From: Octopus sinensis
Taxonomy: Eukaryota
Direction of reading: 5' to 3'
Assembly: GCF_006345805.1 (NCBI RefSeq)
Contig: NC_042997.1
Location: 91,140,001-91,204,000, forward strand
Length of the DNA stretch: 64,000 nucleotides
Shown here: positions 5,546-58,712 of the stretch, piece after piece
How positions within the stretch are numbered: position 1 is the first letter of the stretch
Layout of the letters: every line of letters starts with the position of its first letter
Position numbers and translations under genes: made by a program
The notes under the pieces: generated by a model
The model's database searches: none
Told to the model about the DNA's origin: nothing
What the model saw: only the letters and a program-made list of their open reading frames with translations

Positions 5546-7486
5546 GCTCTGTACTTTCCTGACTTTTACTGTAAAGCATAAGTTTATTGAGTTCTAACAA
5601 CTAGCTATTAGTATAGCTATGCCAAAGAGAAATTGCGTGTGTACATACAAACACCACGAAAGAGAGAGGGGAGATTAAGGATTCCCTTTTAGTGTACTTA
5701 AGTGCCCCTCACCTGCAGTAACTAAAAACTTTGGTAAATTTTAGGAAGTACCCAAAATTTAACGAAACTTTTGGTGAACGTTATAATAAATCCTCGCTTA
5801 TATCGCATTTTATTAGTTATGTTAGAAATGTTCCTAGTTGAACTACTTGCTGTTATGTTGTGAATTACTTGCCTCAGAACATGTTGATCAGAAATGTTGA
5901 CTTAAGTGCATTTATAATGATTTCTAAATGAAATAATAGACGAGAGGTGCTTAATATTCGTCTCTGTATTTTCCTGTAGTATATTTATTTTTGCCCGAAG
6001 TAATCATACACTTTTGTTGTGACAACCTGAACAAAAGAAAAGATATTCTATATGCTCCTCTGTATTGTGACAGTATTCGTTTATATTTAAACCTAATGAG
6101 TAGAATATAATTAAAGGCATTTCATCTAAGACTATAAATTTCGTTTATTATTTTTTCAAGACGTAGTGTGTGATAATGGGAAAATCTGACTGATGTTTCT
6201 AGTATGTCAAGCGATTATGTAGAGGATTTCTCGTCGACTCATTACAGTATTCGATTATTGTAAAAGCGGAACTCTAAATAGGTACAGAGCTGAAGTACTA
6301 TTAGATATATGAAATACATAGATGAGTTATTTGATCTTTATAATACAATTGTAATAATATATAATAACTCACAGAAAATCTGTTTTCTTTATGATAGCTT
6401 GTGATTTGAAATTTTGCGTCACATGTAACATTGTGCATTCAATTGGATCTTACAGAACCAGACTTGTACACAAACTAAAAGTTATTAAATGGAATTCCTA
6501 GGTTGATGTCATAGGTTCATGTGATATTGGAACCAACACGATGTCAGGTACACGAAGATATACACGCAGAACAGAAATGTACTTTTGGTTAACTTCTATT
6601 TTTAAGAACGTGAACTGTTTTAACCCCACAAACTGATAGTCCCTCGATAGAAGTTTCAAGAAATTTAATCGCTCTTATTTTGTTTTGAAAGAAAAAAACT
6701 TTAAATCAAGTTTGTTGATGACGTAGTGAGCTATAATAAAATAATTATATCAATTAGAATTATATTTGTTATTACTGGATTTACCTAATCACTGTTAAGA
6801 TACATCTTCAAAACAATTCAAATATAAGGTACTGTGATTAAGTGCTTTCTTATAAAGGAATGAAACAAGAATTTTCCAAAACAGGAAGTAGGAAATTACG
6901 ATCTTTGTTTTATGTATCTAAATGATCATTGAATTTTATTTCAATGTGCAAACTCCGAGTTTCCAGATGAAAAGGTAATACAGATCAACAATTGTGTTAT
7001 TATATAGATATAACACTCACACAAACATATCTCATCTAACACATCGCACATGCATATTAAAAGGTGAGCTTTGAGTTTAACACTTCGCTTACACTATTAT
7101 CGAACAAACTGAAGGATTGATTTGGTTAATTCAAGACTAAATTGTAATCCCAAGAGTCCAGAAATTGTCAATAGCAAATAATAACTACACGGCGTTCCCC
7201 TCCCCCTGCTTTTCCAGCTGACGAAAGTCTGTGGGGTTATATATACCTATAGAAGGAACTAGATACATATAGGTATATACTTATATATATAACCATCTGG
7301 ATGGATATTTTAAAAACAAAACAAGTGATTAACACACTGAATTACTTAAAAAGCACATAATAAGATTTGGCTAAAACGTAAACATATGAACAAAGGTAAC
7401 AACACACTTTCAATAAATTGCTATTCTACAACTTAAAAAAACAAGTAAATTAGGAAAACTGTAAACCCCTGATAAAAAATACTCAC

Positions 7487-7579
7487 AACAGCTATTGTAG
7501 TGAGGACACATGCAGTTGTATAAGCCCTAGTTATAGGGGGCATCTGCATGTATTCTTGCTGAAAAGTTTGTGCTGCCAT
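7487..7579 (-). CDS. DERL2: Derlin-2 (ERAD rhomboid pseudoprotease), coding exon 1
   Basis: 93 nt encode MAAQTFQQEYMQMPPITRAYTTACVLTTIAV, matching the Derlin-2/3 N-terminus (RAYTTACVLTT), followed by a GTGAGT donor in phase 0. I could not find exon 2 in 1-7486. Confidence 0.92.
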
Positions 7580-17358: not shown

Positions 17359-18480
17359 TCAATTCATGAAAGAGCACTCTTCTGCATTAATTTTCGCACC
17401 TGTCATCGCTTTGTACTCATTTAGCGTCTCGCCAATAAGGTCGATATGCTTGTGGCTTGACCCCATCATGATGATGTCGTCAGCATAGGCAGACGTGCTC
17501 TTTCCACATCCCAGATCATGCAGGACACCCCACAAAGCCTCCAACTTCCACAGTAATGGCTCGAGAATCGATATGTACAGGAGGGAGGAGAGAAGGCATC
17601 CTTGGCGGACCGAACACGAGATGTTGAATGGTTCCGAAAGCTGACCATTCACCCGTATGACTGAGCCTGATGCCGCTGTACAAAGCAGCGATCCACCCAT
17701 AGAAAACTGGACTGAAACCGGCTGCCTTGAGAACAGCTGCCAGGTATCGATGGTCAACCCTATCGAAGGCTTTAGACTGATCTAAATTGATCAAAGCCCC
17801 ACACACGCCAGCTTCATTGTCCACCCTCTCTATGATGTAGCACATGAGATAGAGGTTATTATGGATAGACCTGGTCGGCATGGTGCATGTCTGTGCCTTG
17901 CCAATCAGCTTGTCCATGACAAGCACCAACCTCTTGGCTAGTACCTTGGCCAAAATCTTCAACTCTGCACCAAGCAGAGTGATGGGCCTAAAGTTCCCTA
18001 TCATGTCCCCCTTGTTTGGGTCCTTTCTCAGCAGTGCCACCACTCCTTGACAAACAAAAGCAGGAATTCTCCCGTTTTGTTGCCAGTTGCAGTAGACATT
18101 TGCTAAGAGGCCCAAAAACAAGTCTCTTGGCAAATGTCTACTAGTACACACTGAAGTCTGTCCCGTTGTCCGTCCCACTGCTTGTCCCAAACAGTTGAAA
18201 AGTGCTGTTGAAAGGCTGCACACATCTGCTTCGGTTCAGAAACCTTGCACCCGTTCTGGTCTACCAAATTCAGAATGGTTGCTCTGTTGCCATGCTTCAC
18301 ATCCGCCACATGGGCCCATTGAGAAGCCTTAGTCCCCTCTCCACTTACCGAATGTGCCTTAGCTTTGACAATGCAGCCTTTGTGTTTGGCGTCTAAGTGT
18401 TGGTCGAGGGCCAACCTGGCTGCCAACACATTGGTTGCAATGCCTGTCCTAAGAGCCTTGTCTAGTTTTCTAAATCCCAG
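17359..18480 (-). mobile_element. Tx1/L1-clade LINE ORF2 fragment (reverse transcriptase), frameshifted and truncated at both ends
   Basis: Three overlapping frames give LLRKDPNKGDMIGNFRPITLLGAELKILAKVLAKRL, LINLDQSKAFDRVDHRYL, SVRQGCLLS and AYADDI, which are RT motifs with Tx1-like context. Confidence 0.92.
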
Positions 18481-20703: not shown

Positions 20704-20815
20704 ATGGCGGCATCATACATGTCTCCCCGGTACAACAATGACCTCGATTATGACGACTGTGTCAGTTCGGACTATGACGACGACCGAGATATTGAAGCTA
20801 ATCTTTCAGACGAAG
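20704..20815 (+). CDS. SUDS3: Sin3-HDAC complex subunit SDS3, coding exon 1
   Basis: MAASYMSPRYNNDLDYDDCVSSDYDDDRDIEANLSDE, acidic N-terminus, donor AAG|GTAAGA in phase 1; joins exon 2 in frame. Confidence 0.8.
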
Positions 20816-21223
20816 GTAAGAGATTCAACCAAATGATTAAAAAAAAAAAAAGAATTATTACTTTTCGCTTTGGAATCTATCTTCAGATTTTTATTTTCAC
20901 ATCTTCCTCGTATGCTTATACTTTCACATCTTATTCGTACGATACTCGTACTTTGTTTTCAATTTAAATACACTCTTGATACTCTTTCTCTTTATGTGCA
21001 AGCATTATTAGGTAAACAGTTGTTTTACGAACTAAGCAGAAAATCCCTGTACATTACACAGAGTAAATATTTCATGTATTTGTTACATAATTCCAGTTTG
21101 AATAGCATTCCTTTACATTACGTTTCATGTTGAGTTCTCAAAGGGAGTTGTGCAATTTAGAGGTAACAAAAAACACGAGCCATATTTCCTATATGGATGT
21201 AATAAACAAGCGTGGACCTAAGT

Positions 21224-33135: not shown

Positions 33136-33202
33136 ACACAGAAGATGCCAGTGAAACTGACATGGTCAAGCGAGAAGAGGAGTACACAGAAATCAAGGAA
33201 CA
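33136..33202 (+). CDS. SUDS3: SUDS3 exon 2
   Basis: TTTACAG| (D)TEDASETDMVKREEEYTEIKEQ |GTAAGT; TEDASETD and EIKEQ are hallmark SDS3 motifs; 67 nt, phase 1 to 2. Confidence 0.95.
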
Positions 33203-34394: not shown

Positions 34395-34542
34395 GATGTA
34401 CCAGGATAAACTATTACAAATAAAGAAGCAACTACAGCAATTACAGGAAGGAGTTCTTCCTGAATATATGAAGAAAAACTGTCGGATTGAGCAACAGTAC
34501 CGTGACCGGCTGCTCAGTAATGAGATTTGGAGAGGCTACGAG
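34395..34542 (+). CDS. SUDS3: SUDS3 exon 3
   Basis: TTTCAG| MYQDKLLQIKKQLQQLQEGVLPEYMKKNCRIEQQYRDRLLSNEIWRGYE |GTAATA; Sds3 coiled coil; 148 nt. Confidence 0.95.
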
Positions 34543-35963: not shown

Positions 35964-36023
35964 CAAGAAGTTGTTGAGAAAGAATGGATTAAAGAAAAAC
36001 AAGCTGCTGTGAAGGACTTTGAG
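35964..36023 (+). CDS. SUDS3: SUDS3 exon 4
   Basis: TTTTTAG| QEVVEKEWIKEKQAAVKDFE |GTGGGT; 60 nt, phase 0 to 0. Confidence 0.92.
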
Positions 36024-36890: not shown

Positions 36891-36987
36891 GAAAAGAAAT
36901 TTGGGTTGAAGGAAAATTTAATTGCTGAGTTTGAAGAAAAGAAAAGACATATTGAGAATGAACGTAGCACCATGGAATTAACAGGAG
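36891..36987 (+). CDS. SUDS3: SUDS3 exon 5
   Basis: TTTTTAAG| [32 protein letters not shown] |GTAAGT; 97 nt. Confidence 0.95.
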
Positions 36988-37559: not shown

Positions 37560-38335
37560 TTAGTTCTTCCTCCACTGCTCACCACATTGAGCAGCAAGCT
37601 CCCTCCTTTGTGTTTGATTGGCTGCTACTCTTGCACATCCATTCCATGTAATGCTGTCTCAGGTCAACTTTAAATGTTTTCCACAAACTGATCTTTGCAC
37701 TTTTTCTTTTACACCTGCTAAAAGGTGGTATCCAAGTCATGGTTATTTTTGAGTGCTGTTGATTGGCCAGATGAAGAATGTGGTCACTCAGGCTGAATTG
37801 CGTTCTACAGTTTTTTTGCAATGGTCATGACCTAGGTCTCAGGCTCTTTCCAAAGCACTTCTTATGGAATACATTTAGTTTTCTATCTGTCCTTACTCTC
37901 CTCTTCTCAGTTTCACTAGCATAGATTGCTGTAGGCAGACAAAATTTCACATTAGTGTTGATGTTTGAGGCCACCCAGATGAAGTGCATATGTTGGAACA
38001 CTACTGACACCTTCCCAGTCTTTTAGTCTAGTTCAATTCCACATCATCAGTGCTTGCTTAAAATAGTGCCCAGATAGGTGATATTTGCTTGCTTCTATCT
38101 TGTGCTGGTTGACTTTGATAGTTGCTTCTTGGTCAATGGTATTGTCCACCTTCATCACTTTCATCTTTGTTGTGCTGATCCTTACCCCAGTCTTCTCTGC
38201 ATTTTGTTGCAGTGACATTGTCAATGCTTGCAAATTGGCACTGTTTTCTCCTATTAGTGCAATGCCTTCAGCAAAATTGAGATCTTTCAGCCTTGCCTGC
38301 TCTCTTTGTGGGATTCCATGGTTAGGGTTCACCTA
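37560..38335 (-). mobile_element. RTE-like LINE 3' fragment in SUDS3 intron 5
   Basis: [13 protein letters not shown]...[27 protein letters not shown] and AIYASET..RKLNVFHKKC match decayed DLDFADD/GL.IS..KTK and LLY.SETW/FH.RCLR motifs. Confidence 0.75.
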
Positions 38336-38439: not shown

Positions 38440-38535
38440 ACTCAATGGAAGTGAAGCCTGTTATGACCCGGAAGCTACGACGGAGACCTAATGACCCTAT
38501 GCCTCTTCCAGAGAAAAGGCGGAAACCTTCTCCTG
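38440..38535 (+). CDS. SUDS3: SUDS3 exon 6
   Basis: CCTTTAG| (D)[31 protein letters not shown]; conserved [11 protein letters not shown] motif; ends at the U12 donor ATATCCTTT; 96 nt. Confidence 0.95.
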
Positions 38536-38671
38536 ATATCCTTTTACTATTGCTTTTTTGATTCTCTTTTAGAACTCTTTCTTCCTTATTTCTGCTCATA
38601 CACATGATGTTACTGTTTGTTTAATGAAAAAAAAAAAAAAAATTCATTTTGTATTCCTTAATTCTAATCAC
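38536..38671 (+). other. SUDS3: U12-type (minor spliceosome) AT-AC intron, 136 nt
   Basis: 5' site ATATCCTTTT, branch point TTCCTTAAT at 38654-38662, terminal AC at 38670-38671. Removal gives in-frame KPSP-A-QLNY; no GT-AG solution was found that preserves the protein. Confidence 0.93.
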
Positions 38672-38846
38672 CTCAACTAAATTACATTCTTGATGAAAGT
38701 GAGATTTTGGAAGACCTGAAAGCATTGAATAAATTGTCTGGACGTCCTCTGCAAAAAAAGCCTGTCTCCCCACCAAACAGTGTAGATAGCAGTCTGCCAA
38801 TGGAGGCTAAAATTGAAGATGGTCGACTTTACTATGATAAAAGATG
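38672..38846 (+). CDS. SUDS3: SUDS3 exon 7
   Basis: (A)[57 protein letters not shown](W) |GTATGT; 175 nt. Confidence 0.93.
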
Positions 38847-41547: not shown

Positions 41548-41632
41548 GTTCCATAAGGGACAGCCAGTATATATTGAGGCCAAAGATATGGAGAAGATAA
41601 TGGGAATTATCAGTACCATAGGAACGCAAGAG
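41548..41632 (+). CDS. SUDS3: SUDS3 exon 8
   Basis: TTTTTAG| (W)FHKGQPVYIEAKDMEKIMGIISTIGTQE |GTAAGT; 85 nt. Confidence 0.95.
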
Positions 41633-44959: not shown

Positions 44960-45055
44960 ATCTTGGTGAAGCGTTGTGACAACAACAGCAAGCTGCGCAT
45001 TTATTTGACACAGCTACAGAAAGGCAAATACAGTATGTGTCGTCGTTCTATGTGA
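44960..45055 (+). CDS. SUDS3: SUDS3 exon 9 (last coding exon)
   Basis: TTTTCAG| ILVKRCDNNSKLRIYLTQLQKGKYSMCRRSM-stop (TGA 45053-45055). The nine exons sum to 936 nt, i.e. 311 aa. Confidence 0.95.
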   Translation: MLVKRCDNNSKLRIYLTQLQKGKYSMCRRSM

Positions 45056-51445: not shown

Positions 51446-51600
51446 TTAGTCACTTGGTCTCTTTTCTCCAAATTTCTTAGTATGTTCTTCAGCATTCTTC
51501 AAGAACTTTTTCTTATCTTTAGTAAATTCTTCTGCTAAATCAGCTCTAAGAGGGTGCTCTGGCTCTGGGTCATTAACCAATGCCAACAATGCCTCTATAA
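51446..51600 (-). CDS. UBE2L3: Ubiquitin-conjugating enzyme E2 L3, last coding exon
   Basis: CTTGTAG| (V)[53 protein letters not shown]; 155 nt. Confidence 0.96.
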
Positions 51601-52422
51601 CTACAAGAGAAAAAAAAAGAAAGCATTAGATTATACATCTAAATCCAGACTCCAACTTGTCATTGCCATGTTGGTGTCCATTTATTTCAGTTAATTAACT
51701 AATCAATATTAAGTGAAAGGAATACTAAACTGGTATTCATCAGTTCAATAGTATTGGGGAACATAAATCAACAAGGGATCCTACAGCTGCTGATCCAATA
51801 AAGCAGCAACCAAAACAACCCTAGTTTTAAAAAAAATGGAAAGATACATTGAATAAAATACCCCCAGACACACTATATAAAGAAAGAGATGGAGGTGTGT
51901 TCCACATCTGATAAGTCTGCTTGATCAAGGGGCTGCCTTTGAACCAAATAACTTAAGTGCGTAACACTATTATAGTTAATCTTTTAGTGGCTTATTTGGG
52001 GAGCAGAGACATGCTAAATCTGAAAGTCAATGAGATTCTGGGGGAAAATAATTCAATAATTATGCAAAATAAGGTGCAGCAGCCCATTAGGAAGTTTGAT
52101 TAATTATAGCATGAAAAGGTTTAAAAGGCTAATAAACATTAAAATTAATAAAAGAAAACCATCAGTAAATAAGTTTCCATTCACTCAAAAGTATCTTTAA
52201 TTAAATTTGTATGATAACTGAATTAAAATATCTTCAATATTTACACTTGTCAATGTTATCTAGTTGTCTTTTGAGATGTGACATCGATCATCATTTGTTA
52301 CTGAAAGAATGCTGGTTCACACATACATTCACATACTTGTACATGCACACACATACTCAGAGTTGAAATGCTGTTTGATTTTTCTTTTCAGTGTTGAATG
52401 TTCATCATCCCACTTCCATTAC

Positions 52423-52453
<31 letters not shown>

Positions 52454-52857
52454 GTTGAAATGCTCCCACTACCAGTTCGTCATCTCCCCTTCCATCCTTA
52501 TTCATATGCTGTGATGGAGAAAAACACGAGTATTATTATAGTAGATAAATCTACTTTCAGGGTAAATTTCTCAGATTTTACTTACTTTTTTTTAATGCCA
52601 GCATAAAGTTAAAACCACATTATTTTAACTCATTCAACCATCAAATCACAATGCCTCTGAAGCTTTTGGCACAGATTAAGTGAAAGTTAATTTCTACCTT
52701 GTAATAAAGGATTTTACAACTAATACTATAGAAGACTGATTTCTGTTGTGCTCACCCATTAAATCTTTGTTAGAGAATTTATATGCATAAAATATATAAA
52801 CTGTCAAATGACTACACTACAGTTCCCAATAAAGCTTAGAATTTGTTAAAAGGTTAC

Positions 52858-53044
52858 CTTGGTCCATTTTTGAAGCTGGTTTCCAATTCTCTGCACTGAT
52901 AATTGGCAGGCATACCTGACCTTTCTCATCAACATTGGGATGATAAATCTTGGTTTGGAACGTAATTCGTGGTGGCTTGAAAGGATATTCAGCTGGGAAC
53001 TCTATCTGTATTTTAAATGCTCCTTTATTATAGGGAGGATTGTC
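52858..53044 (-). CDS. UBE2L3: UBE2L3 exon 3 (catalytic exon)
   Basis: TTACAG| [62 protein letters not shown] |GTAACC; HPN motif and catalytic Cys in GQVCLP; 187 nt. Confidence 0.97.
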
Positions 53045-54429
53045 CTGTAATATAAAAGCATCTAGGCTGATCAATCTTTTAAATGGGAATAGGTTTCACA
53101 AAAGTGGTGCATAAATCCTGAAAGCTTAAAAGACAAAAATGTATTACAACTGTAACAACCATAGTTTCCTCCATTAACACAAAACCACATTTTTACAAGT
53201 GAAAGAATCACTCCTCTCATATACCTGTAGCCATGATGATCTTTCACAACTTAACTTGTGAAACATCATCATGCATTTTGATCTAGCATTTTAGAAATTT
53301 ATATAAGTTACATCAGGTCTAAAGGTTTCAAATATAAAAGGAAAGATCATATTCATTGACCCTTTTCTTACCCTGGTTCTGTTGAAACACACTGTGTTTG
53401 ATTGTGTAATTTTGAAATACAAAAAAATTAGTAAAAAAAATCATTTTGGAACAGAAATTAAGATTTTTGTGAAGTTGTAATTTAAATCACTTTAAAACTG
53501 GATATTTGTATCATTGAAATAAAAGTTGTCTCCGACAGGTAGTATGGGGGGGGGGGGGTAACAGTTTGGTGTAGAGCTACGGCACACAGTTTGACAAAAA
53601 CCAAGAGAAGTCAATAGCTAGATTGCAACAGACAAAAGCAATATTTCTAAAAGTATTTGTATTTTATATCAAGTAAATAACTATCCCAGGCTGAAGTATT
53701 TCTTGGCTCTAGTGCCTCCTTTGTTACACTGAATTAGGTTACTGGGGTATAATCCTATAATATCCTTTTGTATTTCTCATTTTTATTTAACCCTTTCATA
53801 ATCACACCTGAAACTTTTCAGTCTACTTGCTTCCACCTGTAATTATTAATTCATACTGGAGTGAGAATATTGATAAAAATTTATGTCAGTGTAATAATGT
53901 GTATAAATATCTTCAAATACAAACTAAGATAATTTTGAAGCAACTTAGATATTTAGATAAAGCAAAGTACATGTCTAATGTTCTGAATTGTTTAAACTCC
54001 TGCTGATTCTTTTAAAATTCATATTAATTTCATCATTTGACCTACAATGCAGCATTTACTAATGGATAGTGAAAGTCTCAAAGCAATGACAACTTGTTTT
54101 AAGCTACAAGTACTAGTATTTCACAATGTATTAAGAGAATGCTGGTGGCTAAGAAGCCTGCATTCCTCACTGTATGCACAGTTAAGGAATCCAATATTAC
54201 AATACATAATGTTAAGAATACAGCATATAATTGCACTGTGAAGGTAGGTGTCAGTAACACTGACAAAAAGAAATGAACATATTGAGTCATTTCAATGGTT
54301 AAATGAATGCCTACAATTATTACTGGAAATATCTTTGAAAACGCTTACATTCAAAATATAATAGGATGATTTCACTAGAAAAGTTCATTTACAGTTAGAG
54401 ATTGCCAACAGCCTTGGAAAACTTATGAG

Positions 54430-57562: not shown

Positions 57563-58616
57563 ACACACATATATTCACTGTCAAAATGTAAATATTGGTT
57601 AAATAAAGGATAAAAAATAAAACTCATTCCAAATTCAAAAGTAATTAAAAGTTGTGCTTTTAAACAATTTTACAGGTTTTAAATTTGAAATCAATTTCTT
57701 TACACAAAATAATAGACATTATTATTACAAACACCAAACACTTTTACCATTAGGCACATTAGGTTTAGAAAACACAAAATAATTCAGTTGTTGCATGACT
57801 TGCTAAAAATAGCAGCCAAAACTTTCACAAACCACTCAGTATGCTATATTGAATGATATAGTTCCTGATATGCAAATGAAATTGTCACAATTAAACATCT
57901 TTCATTATAGTCTTTTAATGGATGATCTGAAACTACAGAATAACAAAGTTTACATTGAGCCAAATGCAGCAAGACACTGCAACGAAATTTCCCTATTATC
58001 ACAACCGTCTTAAATTAAGAAAAGATATTTTAGAAAATGTAGTGTCAGATTGGATCCTACTGCAAGGTGTCTTGAATAAATTTGTTTTCTATAGTCAGAT
58101 ATGTGGATTATACTTGTAATTCAAAAAGGTACAACCTTATCACACACTGTATCACATTAATTCTACCTGAGAATTATGTTATGGGAACATATGTCTGCTC
58201 AGCCAATTACATGTTAATTTAGGAGCAGGTAATCCATTTGATGAAACTACTGAATGATGAAGACCCATCACACAATTTGGACTAAGCTTTGCCCGACTGT
58301 AAAACTTAGGGTCCAAGCCAAAGCAAATCTTATAATAAATCTGATTTACATTTGGCCAGCAACTTTTCACTTTCAAAGCAAGATGGTCTATTCTGATATT
58401 TTCACATTGTAGCAAACACTATCTTTATGATTTCCCAAACTGTCTTGATTAGATTCAGAAAAGACCAATATTAATTGGTTTGAATTACCAATTAGACATT
58501 ACTCAAAAATTCAACAAGGATACAAAATAAAATTACAGCCCCATAACTATTTATGTTCACTTTGTGTGTGTGCATGTGCGAGAGAGATATAAAGAGATGA
58601 ATGAAAAACCACTTAC

Positions 58617-58712
58617 AGGCACTAATAGGCAGTTCCAAAGAAGCATATTAGAGCGATCAGGATTTATTTCACAATATGATTTGTTGATTCCAGTTTTCAA
58701 TTCAATTAGTTC
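58617..58712 (-). CDS. UBE2L3: UBE2L3 exon 2 (divergent)
   Basis: TTTTCTAG| ELIELKTGINKSYCEINPDRSNMLLWNCLLVP |GTAAGT; 96 nt, phase 0 to 0, collinear with vertebrate ELEEIRKCGMKNFRNIQVDEANLLTWQGLIVP; joins exon 3 in frame. Confidence 0.85.

What the first reader, a model, noticed from the sequence alone, without database searches (positions are those of the whole stretch)
38536..38671. AT-AC minor-spliceosome (U12) intron in SUDS3
Seen in sequence: the conserved KRRKPSP exon ends at G|ATATCCTTTT, with TTCCTTAAT 9 nt before a terminal AC, and removing the 136 nt gives KPSP-A-QLNY in frame. Established: ATATCCTT plus TTCCTTAAY is the U12 signature, and AT-AC introns are very rare. Inference: this is an ancient intron shared with vertebrate SUDS3/BRMS1-family genes and a rate-limiting control point on a Sin3-HDAC subunit. 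GT-AG-only gene predictors would mis-annotate this gene; the supplied ORF track simply reads through it.
Basis: partly seen in the sequence, partly recalled or inferred. Interest (0 to 1): 0.75.

Follow-up and report, generated by a model that had tools for sequence, protein, structure and literature searches.

The report
Known AT-AC minor intron in octopus SUDS3
The 136-base stretch is a genuine U12-type (minor-spliceosome) AT-AC intron in the octopus SUDS3 gene. It sits at the same codon as the well-studied human SUDS3 intron 7 and is already implied by the public octopus annotation, so it is correct but ordinary.

Summary
Window 38536-38671 begins ATATCCTTT, carries TTCCTTAAT nine bases before a terminal AC, and its removal joins ...EKRRKPSP to [11 protein letters not shown]... 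in frame.

The spliced nine-exon model is 100% identical to the RefSeq protein 'SDS3 isoform X1 [Octopus sinensis]'. The intron is therefore already built into public annotation.

A U12-type intron lies at the same codon and phase in:
- human SUDS3 intron 7, which is AT-AC and shown experimentally to depend on the minor spliceosome
- bullfrog, a hemichordate and an annelid
- a second cephalopod and two unnamed invertebrate contigs
- a tubeworm-like annelid, where it has switched to the GT-AG U12 subtype

A longhorn beetle has lost it. In the second cephalopod, an assembled transcript joins the two exons exactly at the AT and AC boundaries.

No GT-AG alternative preserves the conserved residues. 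The exon after the intron starts at the Sin3-interaction domain, so a retained intron would stop translation after nine codons and remove that domain.

The "rate-limiting control point" idea is untested in octopus. Novelty is low.

The parts
38536..38671 (+). U12-type AT-AC intron, 136 nt, phase 1. It is coding intron 6 of SUDS3.
   Evidence: It is the only splice that restores the ortholog-conserved KRRKPSP-A-QLNY. The product is 100% identical to RefSeq O. sinensis SDS3.
38536..38544 (+). U12-type 5' splice site ATATCCTTT
   Evidence: The same motif sits at the same codon in L001, L002, L004, L006, L007 and L008; L003 has GTATCCTT.
38654..38662 (+). Branch-point sequence TTCCTTAAT. The candidate branch adenosines at 38660/38661 lie 10-11 nt from the 3' end.
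   Evidence: This is the only TTCCTTAA on the + strand of the window. Orthologs carry TCCTTAAC-like motifs at the same distance.
38670..38671 (+). Terminal AC of the intron. No polypyrimidine tract separates the branch site from the 3' end.
   Evidence: All seven other introns of the gene end in a pyrimidine tract plus AG.
38440..38535 (+). SUDS3 coding exon 6, encoding (D)[31 protein letters not shown]
38672..38846 (+). SUDS3 coding exon 7. It starts at the Sin3-interaction domain ([22 protein letters not shown]) and runs to ...YYDKRW.
   Evidence: PDB 2N2H (SDS3 Sin3-interaction peptide) aligns to model residues 155-178.
20704..20815 (+). SUDS3 coding exon 1 (ATG at 20704, donor GTAAGA at 20816)
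33136..33202 (+). SUDS3 coding exon 2
34395..34542 (+). SUDS3 coding exon 3
35964..36023 (+). SUDS3 coding exon 4
36891..36987 (+). SUDS3 coding exon 5
41548..41632 (+). SUDS3 coding exon 8
44960..45055 (+). SUDS3 coding exon 9, including the TGA stop
   Evidence: The exon lengths sum to 936 nt, which is 311 codons plus the stop and matches P0036.

Best explanation
Window 38536-38671 is a U12-dependent (minor-spliceosome) intron of the AT-AC subtype. It lies in the SUDS3/SDS3 gene of an octopus; the encoded protein is identical to the Octopus sinensis one.

By established knowledge of this intron class, splicing would work as follows. U11 and then U6atac pair with the 5' site ATATCCTTT. U12 pairs with TTCCTTAAT and bulges a branch adenosine 10-11 nt from the 3' AC. 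Splicing then joins G(38535) to CT(38672), making an alanine codon between KRRKPSP and QLNY.

The intron is the ortholog of human SUDS3 intron 7. It has stayed at this codon, in phase 1, since at least the last common ancestor of bilaterians. I saw occasional subtype switching to GT-AG and one loss in an insect.

It is most likely spliced constitutively. If it were retained, a stop codon after nine intron-encoded residues would remove the Sin3-interaction domain and the C-terminal domain, or would mark the mRNA for decay. Minor-spliceosome activity can therefore in principle limit SUDS3 output. Whether that is a regulated control point in octopus is inference, not shown.
For: **Sequence anatomy.**
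- The 5' site, the branch site at the right distance, the terminal AC and the missing pyrimidine tract are all present.
- All seven other introns of the gene are GT-AG with pyrimidine tracts.
- Only this splice keeps the conserved residues.
- The product is 100% identical over 273 aa to RefSeq O. sinensis SDS3 isoform X1.
- Gene identity: Pfam Sds3, E = 1.4e-17; PDB SDS3 chains 7SXI, 4ZQA and 2N2H.

**Orthologous introns at the same codon and phase.**
- Human SUDS3 intron 7, AT_AC U12, from published junction sequences. It is used as a U12 test intron in RT-PCR, and its lariat was detected (PMC8280824; PMC11039992).
- Bullfrog L006.
- Hemichordate Glandiceps L007 and annelid Owenia L008.
- Second cephalopod L004, and unnamed contigs L001 and L002.
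- L003, GT-AG U12 subtype, 89% identical to Lamellibrachia over the two exons flanking the intron.

**Transcript evidence.** Contig L010 matches genomic L004 at 100% identity and joins position 486 directly to 2044. That removes exactly ATATCC...CTAC. Contigs carrying the same 311-aa product are indexed in 28 blocks of the assembly collection.

**Published context.** O. sinensis is one of the species in a published pan-eukaryotic minor-intron survey, which reports relatively high minor-intron density in molluscs (PMC10639083).
Against: - I examined no RNA reads from the window's own species. Junction use there is inferred from the RefSeq protein and from a related cephalopod.
- No minor snRNA gene lies in the window (Rfam, 0 hits). 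The presence of the minor spliceosome therefore rests on the literature.
- The motif combination alone has about a 6% chance of appearing somewhere in a random 64-kb window.
- A second in-frame AC at 38677 could act as a minor alternative 3' site.
- Nothing here addresses splicing kinetics or regulation.
Confidence: 0.95

Rival explanations
1. The intron is AT-AC but is removed by the major (U2-type) spliceosome, as a few AT-AC introns are.
For: U2-type AT-AC introns exist. For example, SYCP2_U2_AT-AC serves as a control in PMC8280824.
Against: By established knowledge, U2-type AT-AC introns have a 5' site resembling the major consensus and a pyrimidine tract. This intron has a full ATATCCTTT, a TTCCTTAAT branch site 10-11 nt from the 3' end and no pyrimidine tract. 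The human ortholog is retained when the minor-spliceosome factor CENATAC is depleted.
Confidence: 0.02
2. The motif match is chance, and the real splice uses nearby GT-AG sites.
For: The ATATCCTT octamer occurs at about chance frequency in the window, and one copy is inside a coding exon. A loose U12-like pairing on the minus strand (58523-54172) proved to be chance.
Against: Only two in-frame GT-AG pairs exist, and they delete 36-39 conserved residues, including [10 protein letters not shown] and the start of the Sin3-interaction domain. The RefSeq protein contains the AT-AC-spliced sequence. A transcript contig in a related cephalopod uses the exact AT-AC boundaries.
Confidence: 0.01
3. The intron is a regulated retention switch. 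Its slow or conditional removal sets the level of functional SUDS3, and so of Sin3-HDAC assembly, in octopus tissues.
For: - Retention gives a stop after nine codons, before the Sin3-interaction domain.
- Human SUDS3 intron 7 retention rises when the minor-spliceosome factor CENATAC is depleted (PMC8280824).
- The intron has been kept across bilaterians.
Against: - There are no octopus expression or retention data.
- The beetle lineage lost the intron and kept the gene.
- One annelid switched subtype.
- The pan-eukaryotic survey argues that neutral processes may explain much of minor-intron evolution (PMC10639083).
Confidence: 0.12

Closest known systems
Human SUDS3 intron 7 (chr12:118400755-118401758, AT-AC, U12-type)
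   Same: - Same gene family member, same codon (the alanine between KP[AS]P and QLNY) and same phase 1.
- Same AT-AC termini and a branch site close to the 3' end.
- The downstream exon begins the Sin3-interaction domain.
   Different: - Length is 136 nt here against about 1 kb in human.
- The human 5' site reads ATATCCAT and its branch site TCCTTTAAC, against ATATCCTTT and TTCCTTAAT here.
- It is intron 7 in human. Here it is coding intron 6, because the vertebrate gene splits the next exon.
U12-type introns of human BRMS1L (AT-AC) and BRMS1 (GT-AG subtype)
   Same: These are paralogs in the Sds3-like family. Each has a phase-1 U12 intron just before the helix that aligns with the SUDS3 Sin3-interaction domain.
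   Different: The position is one residue off in the BLASTP alignment, next to a 3-residue gap. Positional homology is therefore likely but not proven.
Minor-intron catalogue for Octopus sinensis (Larue and Roy 2023, PMC10639083)
   Same: Same species-level genome and same intron class. That survey scored annotated introns, and the RefSeq protein of this gene already has the AT-AC-spliced sequence.
   Different: I could not open per-intron tables, so I have not seen this intron listed by name.

Membership tests
U12-type (minor spliceosome) intron | 5' splice site [A/G]TATCCTT directly at the exon end | tested here: met
   ATATCCTTT at 38536-38544, directly after the last conserved codon base
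U12-type (minor spliceosome) intron | Branch-point sequence TCCTTAAC-like, about 8-20 nt from the 3' splice site | tested here: met
   TTCCTTAAT at 38654-38662; the adenosines lie 10-11 nt from 38671
U12-type (minor spliceosome) intron | No polypyrimidine tract between branch site and 3' end; AT-AC or GT-AG termini | tested here: met
   Only TCTAATC separates the branch site from the terminal AC. The other seven introns have pyrimidine tracts plus AG.
U12-type (minor spliceosome) intron | The junction is used in mature RNA | tested here: inconclusive
   Shown directly in a related cephalopod: transcript L010 joins genomic L004 at 486|2044. For the window's own species it is only inferred, from 100% identity to the RefSeq protein.
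U12-type (minor spliceosome) intron | Removal depends on U11/U12/U4atac/U6atac | not testable with these tools
   Shown for the human ortholog by CENATAC depletion and lariat detection (PMC8280824; PMC11039992). No minor snRNA gene lies in the window.
U12-type (minor spliceosome) intron | Positional orthology with an accepted U12 intron | tested here: met
   Same codon and phase as human SUDS3 intron 7 and as U12-type introns in frog, hemichordate, annelids and a cephalopod
SUDS3 / Sds3-like family (Sin3-HDAC subunit) | Sds3 domain, Sin3-interaction domain and C-terminal domain in order | tested here: met
   Pfam PF08598 at 64.9 bits against a cutoff of 25.4. PDB 4ZQA covers model residues 40-123, 2N2H covers 155-178 and 7SXI covers 199-272. 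The model is 100% identical to O. sinensis SDS3.

The most novel reading that the evidence does not exclude
The very short (136 nt) AT-AC intron sits exactly at the start of the Sin3-interaction domain. It could act in cephalopods as a tunable retention switch that sets the dose of assembly-competent SUDS3. Its conservation across the SUDS3/BRMS1 paralogs could reflect selection for coupling Sin3-HDAC output to minor-spliceosome activity.
Probability: 0.1. Interest if true: 0.45.

Novelty: already known. Interest (0 to 1): 0.15.

Why it matters
The finding matters mostly as a quality check.

- A tool-free read of raw sequence can correctly call a minor intron.
- The public octopus model is right at this site, while some other deposited SUDS3 models are wrong at the same junction (bullfrog P0022 and owl P0008).
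- It adds gene-level detail to a known pattern: a U12 intron held at one codon from octopus to human, switched in subtype in one annelid and lost in a beetle.
- It does not open a new question. The human ortholog is already a routine U12 reporter intron, and octopus minor introns have been surveyed genome-wide.

Tried and rejected
- **Pfam on the two-exon peptide alone.** No hit. The full model was needed.
- **Rfam scan of the window for minor snRNAs.** No hit.
- **Reindeer hit P0003.** It turned out to be an intronless retrocopy, so it says nothing about intron position.
- **Lingula protein P0066.** Not on record for DNA look-up.
- **Search for coding exon 1 by acidic-ORF ranking.** This failed. 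The RefSeq N-terminus located the exon at 20704.
- **Monte Carlo scripts.** Two timed out. A simpler composition-only model ran. It does not preserve dinucleotide content.
- **Loose U12-like match on the minus strand (58523-54172).** Checked and rejected. The GTATCCTT lies inside a GT-AG intron of the UBE2L3-like gene, and nothing coding follows the putative 3' end.
- **Cnidarian or sponge SUDS3 locus.** I did not find one, so I have not shown an origin before bilaterians.
- **intronIC scoring.** Not available.

Full report
**1. The observation**

- The exon ends ...AAA CCT TCT CCT G at 38535.
- The next bases are ATATCCTTTT.
- TTCCTTAAT occupies 38654-38662.
- Seven further bases, TCTAATC, lead to the terminal AC at 38670-38671.
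- The exon resumes CT CAA CTA AAT TAC. The interval is 136 nt.

Splicing gives ...[54 protein letters not shown]... in one frame.

**2. Is it more than chance?**

The octamer alone is not significant.
- ATATCCTT occurs three times on the plus strand and twice on the minus strand.
- The copy at 52988 lies inside a UBE2L3-like coding exon, at ...PAEYPFKPP....
- The strict combination is ATATCCTT, then TTCCTTAAY within 2 kb, then AC a few bases later. It is expected 0.067 times per 64 kb on both strands in composition-matched random sequence, and it occurs once, here.
- A looser pattern is expected about 2.2 times per window. It gave one extra minus-strand match, which proved to be chance.

The decisive point is placement. 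Both ends coincide to the nucleotide with the points where protein homology stops and resumes.

I enumerated every GT/GC-AG and AT-AC pair around the site that keeps the frame open. Only two GT-AG pairs qualify, and they delete 39 and 36 conserved residues. Only 38536-38671 restores the sequence seen in all orthologs.

**3. The gene**

tblastn with database SUDS3 fragments, followed by inspection of the splice sites, gave nine coding exons on the plus strand:

| Exon | Coordinates |
|---|---|
| 1 | 20704-20815 |
| 2 | 33136-33202 |
| 3 | 34395-34542 |
| 4 | 35964-36023 |
| 5 | 36891-36987 |
| 6 | 38440-38535 |
| 7 | 38672-38846 |
| 8 | 41548-41632 |
| 9 | 44960-45055 |

These sum to 936 nt, which is 311 codons plus the stop.
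- Seven of the eight introns are GT-AG with pyrimidine tracts. Coding intron 6 is the AT-AC one, and it has no pyrimidine tract.
- The model matches Pfam Sds3.
- It matches three solved SDS3 fragments: the coiled coil 4ZQA, the Sin3-interaction peptide 2N2H and the C-terminal domain 7SXI.
- It is 100% identical over all 273 queried residues to 'sin3 histone deacetylase corepressor complex component SDS3 isoform X1 [Octopus sinensis]', which is 311 aa.

The window is therefore an octopus SUDS3 locus. The public protein model already contains KPSPAQLNY, so the AT-AC splice is already annotated.

**4. Related loci**

Several short database proteins were ORF calls that read from the exon into the intron, as ...KPSPDIL... 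or ...TSPSIL.... Fetching their DNA, and the DNA of named orthologs, gave a U12-type intron at the same codon and in phase 1 in eight loci:

| Locus | Organism | Subtype | Length |
|---|---|---|---|
| L004 | second cephalopod | AT-AC | 1557 nt |
| L001 | unnamed invertebrate contig | AT-AC | 1230 nt |
| L002 | unnamed invertebrate contig | AT-AC | 294 nt |
| L003 | tubeworm-like annelid, 89% identical to Lamellibrachia over the two flanking exons | GT-AG U12 subtype (A\|GTATCCTT...ACCTTAAC...CAG) | 1012 nt |
| L006 | bullfrog | AT-AC (G\|ATATCCTTTAC...TGCCTTAAC...AC\|CT) | about 3 kb |
| L007 | hemichordate Glandiceps | AT-AC | about 0.6 kb |
| L008 | annelid Owenia | AT-AC; the split codon encodes threonine | about 0.6 kb |

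In the longhorn beetle Rhamnusium (L009), the coding sequence runs straight through the site, so the intron was lost there. Several insect-like ORFs in the database are also continuous across it.

**5. Human**

The supplement of de Wolf et al. 2021 (PMC8280824) lists SUDS3 chr12:118400755-118401758 as AT_AC U12.
- The junction is CCTGCTCCAG|ATATCCATTT... and ...GTCCTTTAACTCTCAACAC|CCCAGC, which reads P-A-P, a split alanine, then Q. That is the same codon and phase.
- The paper uses 'SUDS3 minor intron 7' as an RT-PCR reporter for minor-spliceosome defects.
- Norppa et al. 2024 (PMC11039992) detect its lariat as a U12 example.
- The same supplement lists BRMS1L (AT_AC) and BRMS1 (GT_AG U12), with junctions reading VVS-G|P and LVS-G|P.

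In a BLASTP alignment of the octopus protein with BRMS1L, that site lies one residue from the SUDS3 site, next to a three-residue gap. A shared origin before the paralogs split is likely but not proven.

**6. Transcript evidence**

The product P0037 is 87% identical to the octopus protein. Contigs that encode it are indexed in 28 blocks of the assembly collection; none is longer than 3 kb, and the four I fetched carry the full 311-aa ORF uninterrupted.

One of them, L010, matches the genomic contig L004 at 100% identity in three blocks. It joins L004 position 486 directly to 2044, which removes exactly ATATCC...CTAC. That is direct junction evidence in a close relative.

For the window's own species, junction use is inferred from the RefSeq model.

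**7. Mechanism**

*Shown:*
- the splice-site anatomy
- the positional orthology
- junction use in a relative

*From established knowledge of the minor spliceosome:*
- U11, and later U6atac, recognise ATATCCTTT.
- U12 pairs with TTCCTTAAT.
- The short distance from branch point to 3' site selects the AC.

*Inferred:* the consequences of retention. Retention adds DILLLLLF and a stop just before the residues that align to the Sin3-interaction peptide 2N2H. A retained transcript would therefore encode a protein lacking the Sin3-binding and C-terminal domains. Alternatively it could be degraded, because two exon junctions lie downstream.

The intron can thus limit output when minor splicing is impaired, as in human cells depleted of the minor-spliceosome factor CENATAC. 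Nothing here shows that octopus uses this as regulation. The beetle loss and the annelid subtype switch show the arrangement is not obligatory. The survey by Larue and Roy argues that much of minor-intron evolution may be neutral (PMC10639083).

**8. Comparison and novelty**

This is a standard member of a well-defined class and the ortholog of a named human reporter intron. It is implied by the RefSeq annotation of the species, whose minor introns were included in a published survey of over 3000 genomes.

The deposited bullfrog protein P0022 drops VPIPDKRRKPAPAQ, and the owl protein P0008 drops APAQ, at this junction.

I rate the finding correct, well supported and already known.

Noticed in passing
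window 7469-7579 (-), and L007 1-113 (-), L008 1-227 (-): The first exon of a Derlin (DER1) gene ([32 protein letters not shown]) lies head-to-head upstream of SUDS3. The same divergent Derlin-SUDS3 pairing occurs in the annelid Owenia and the hemichordate Glandiceps, which suggests conserved microsynteny and perhaps a shared promoter region.
   Followed up: partly
window 51449-51625, 52820-53095 and about 58600-58700 (-): A UBE2L3-like ubiquitin-conjugating enzyme gene lies tail-to-tail downstream of SUDS3. One of its coding exons contains ATATCCTT at 52988, which serves as a chance control. GTATCCTT at 58523 lies inside one of its GT-AG introns.
   Followed up: partly
window 17362-18235 (-) and 38036-38332 (-): Open frames resembling reverse transcriptase of non-LTR retrotransposons (YADD-type motif). 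One lies between Derlin and SUDS3. The other is a degenerate fragment in the intron just upstream of SUDS3 exon 6.
   Followed up: no
L003 6341-7352: In a tubeworm-like annelid contig, the orthologous intron is the GT-AG U12 subtype (A|GTATCCTT...ACCTTAAC...CAG). It is a clean example of an AT-AC to GT-AG subtype switch at a fixed position.
   Followed up: partly
P0022 (bullfrog, L006 9925-12922) and P0008 (spotted owl): Deposited SUDS3 protein models skip residues exactly at this junction: VPIPDKRRKPAPAQ in the bullfrog and APAQ in the owl. This is consistent with gene predictors forcing GT-AG sites around the AT-AC intron.
   Followed up: partly
L005 3001-3465: The reindeer 'unnamed protein product' P0003 is encoded by an uninterrupted 465-nt ORF covering the last 154 residues of SUDS3. 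It is most likely a processed retrocopy rather than the real gene.
   Followed up: no
window 38627-38642 and 38677: The intron contains a run of 16 A residues. A second in-frame AC six bases downstream of the 3' site would give KPSP-V-NY if used.
   Followed up: no
L009 about 2022-2120: The beetle Rhamnusium bicolor has no intron at the SUDS3 site. Its SUDS3 locus is also annotated as two adjacent genes (1240-1876 and 1893-2252), which is probably a split gene model.
   Followed up: partly
PMC8280824 supplement (human chr12:118400755): The human ortholog's 5' site reads ATATCCAT rather than ATATCCTT, which is what the seven AT-AC non-human loci I read carry (L003 has GTATCCTT).
   Followed up: no
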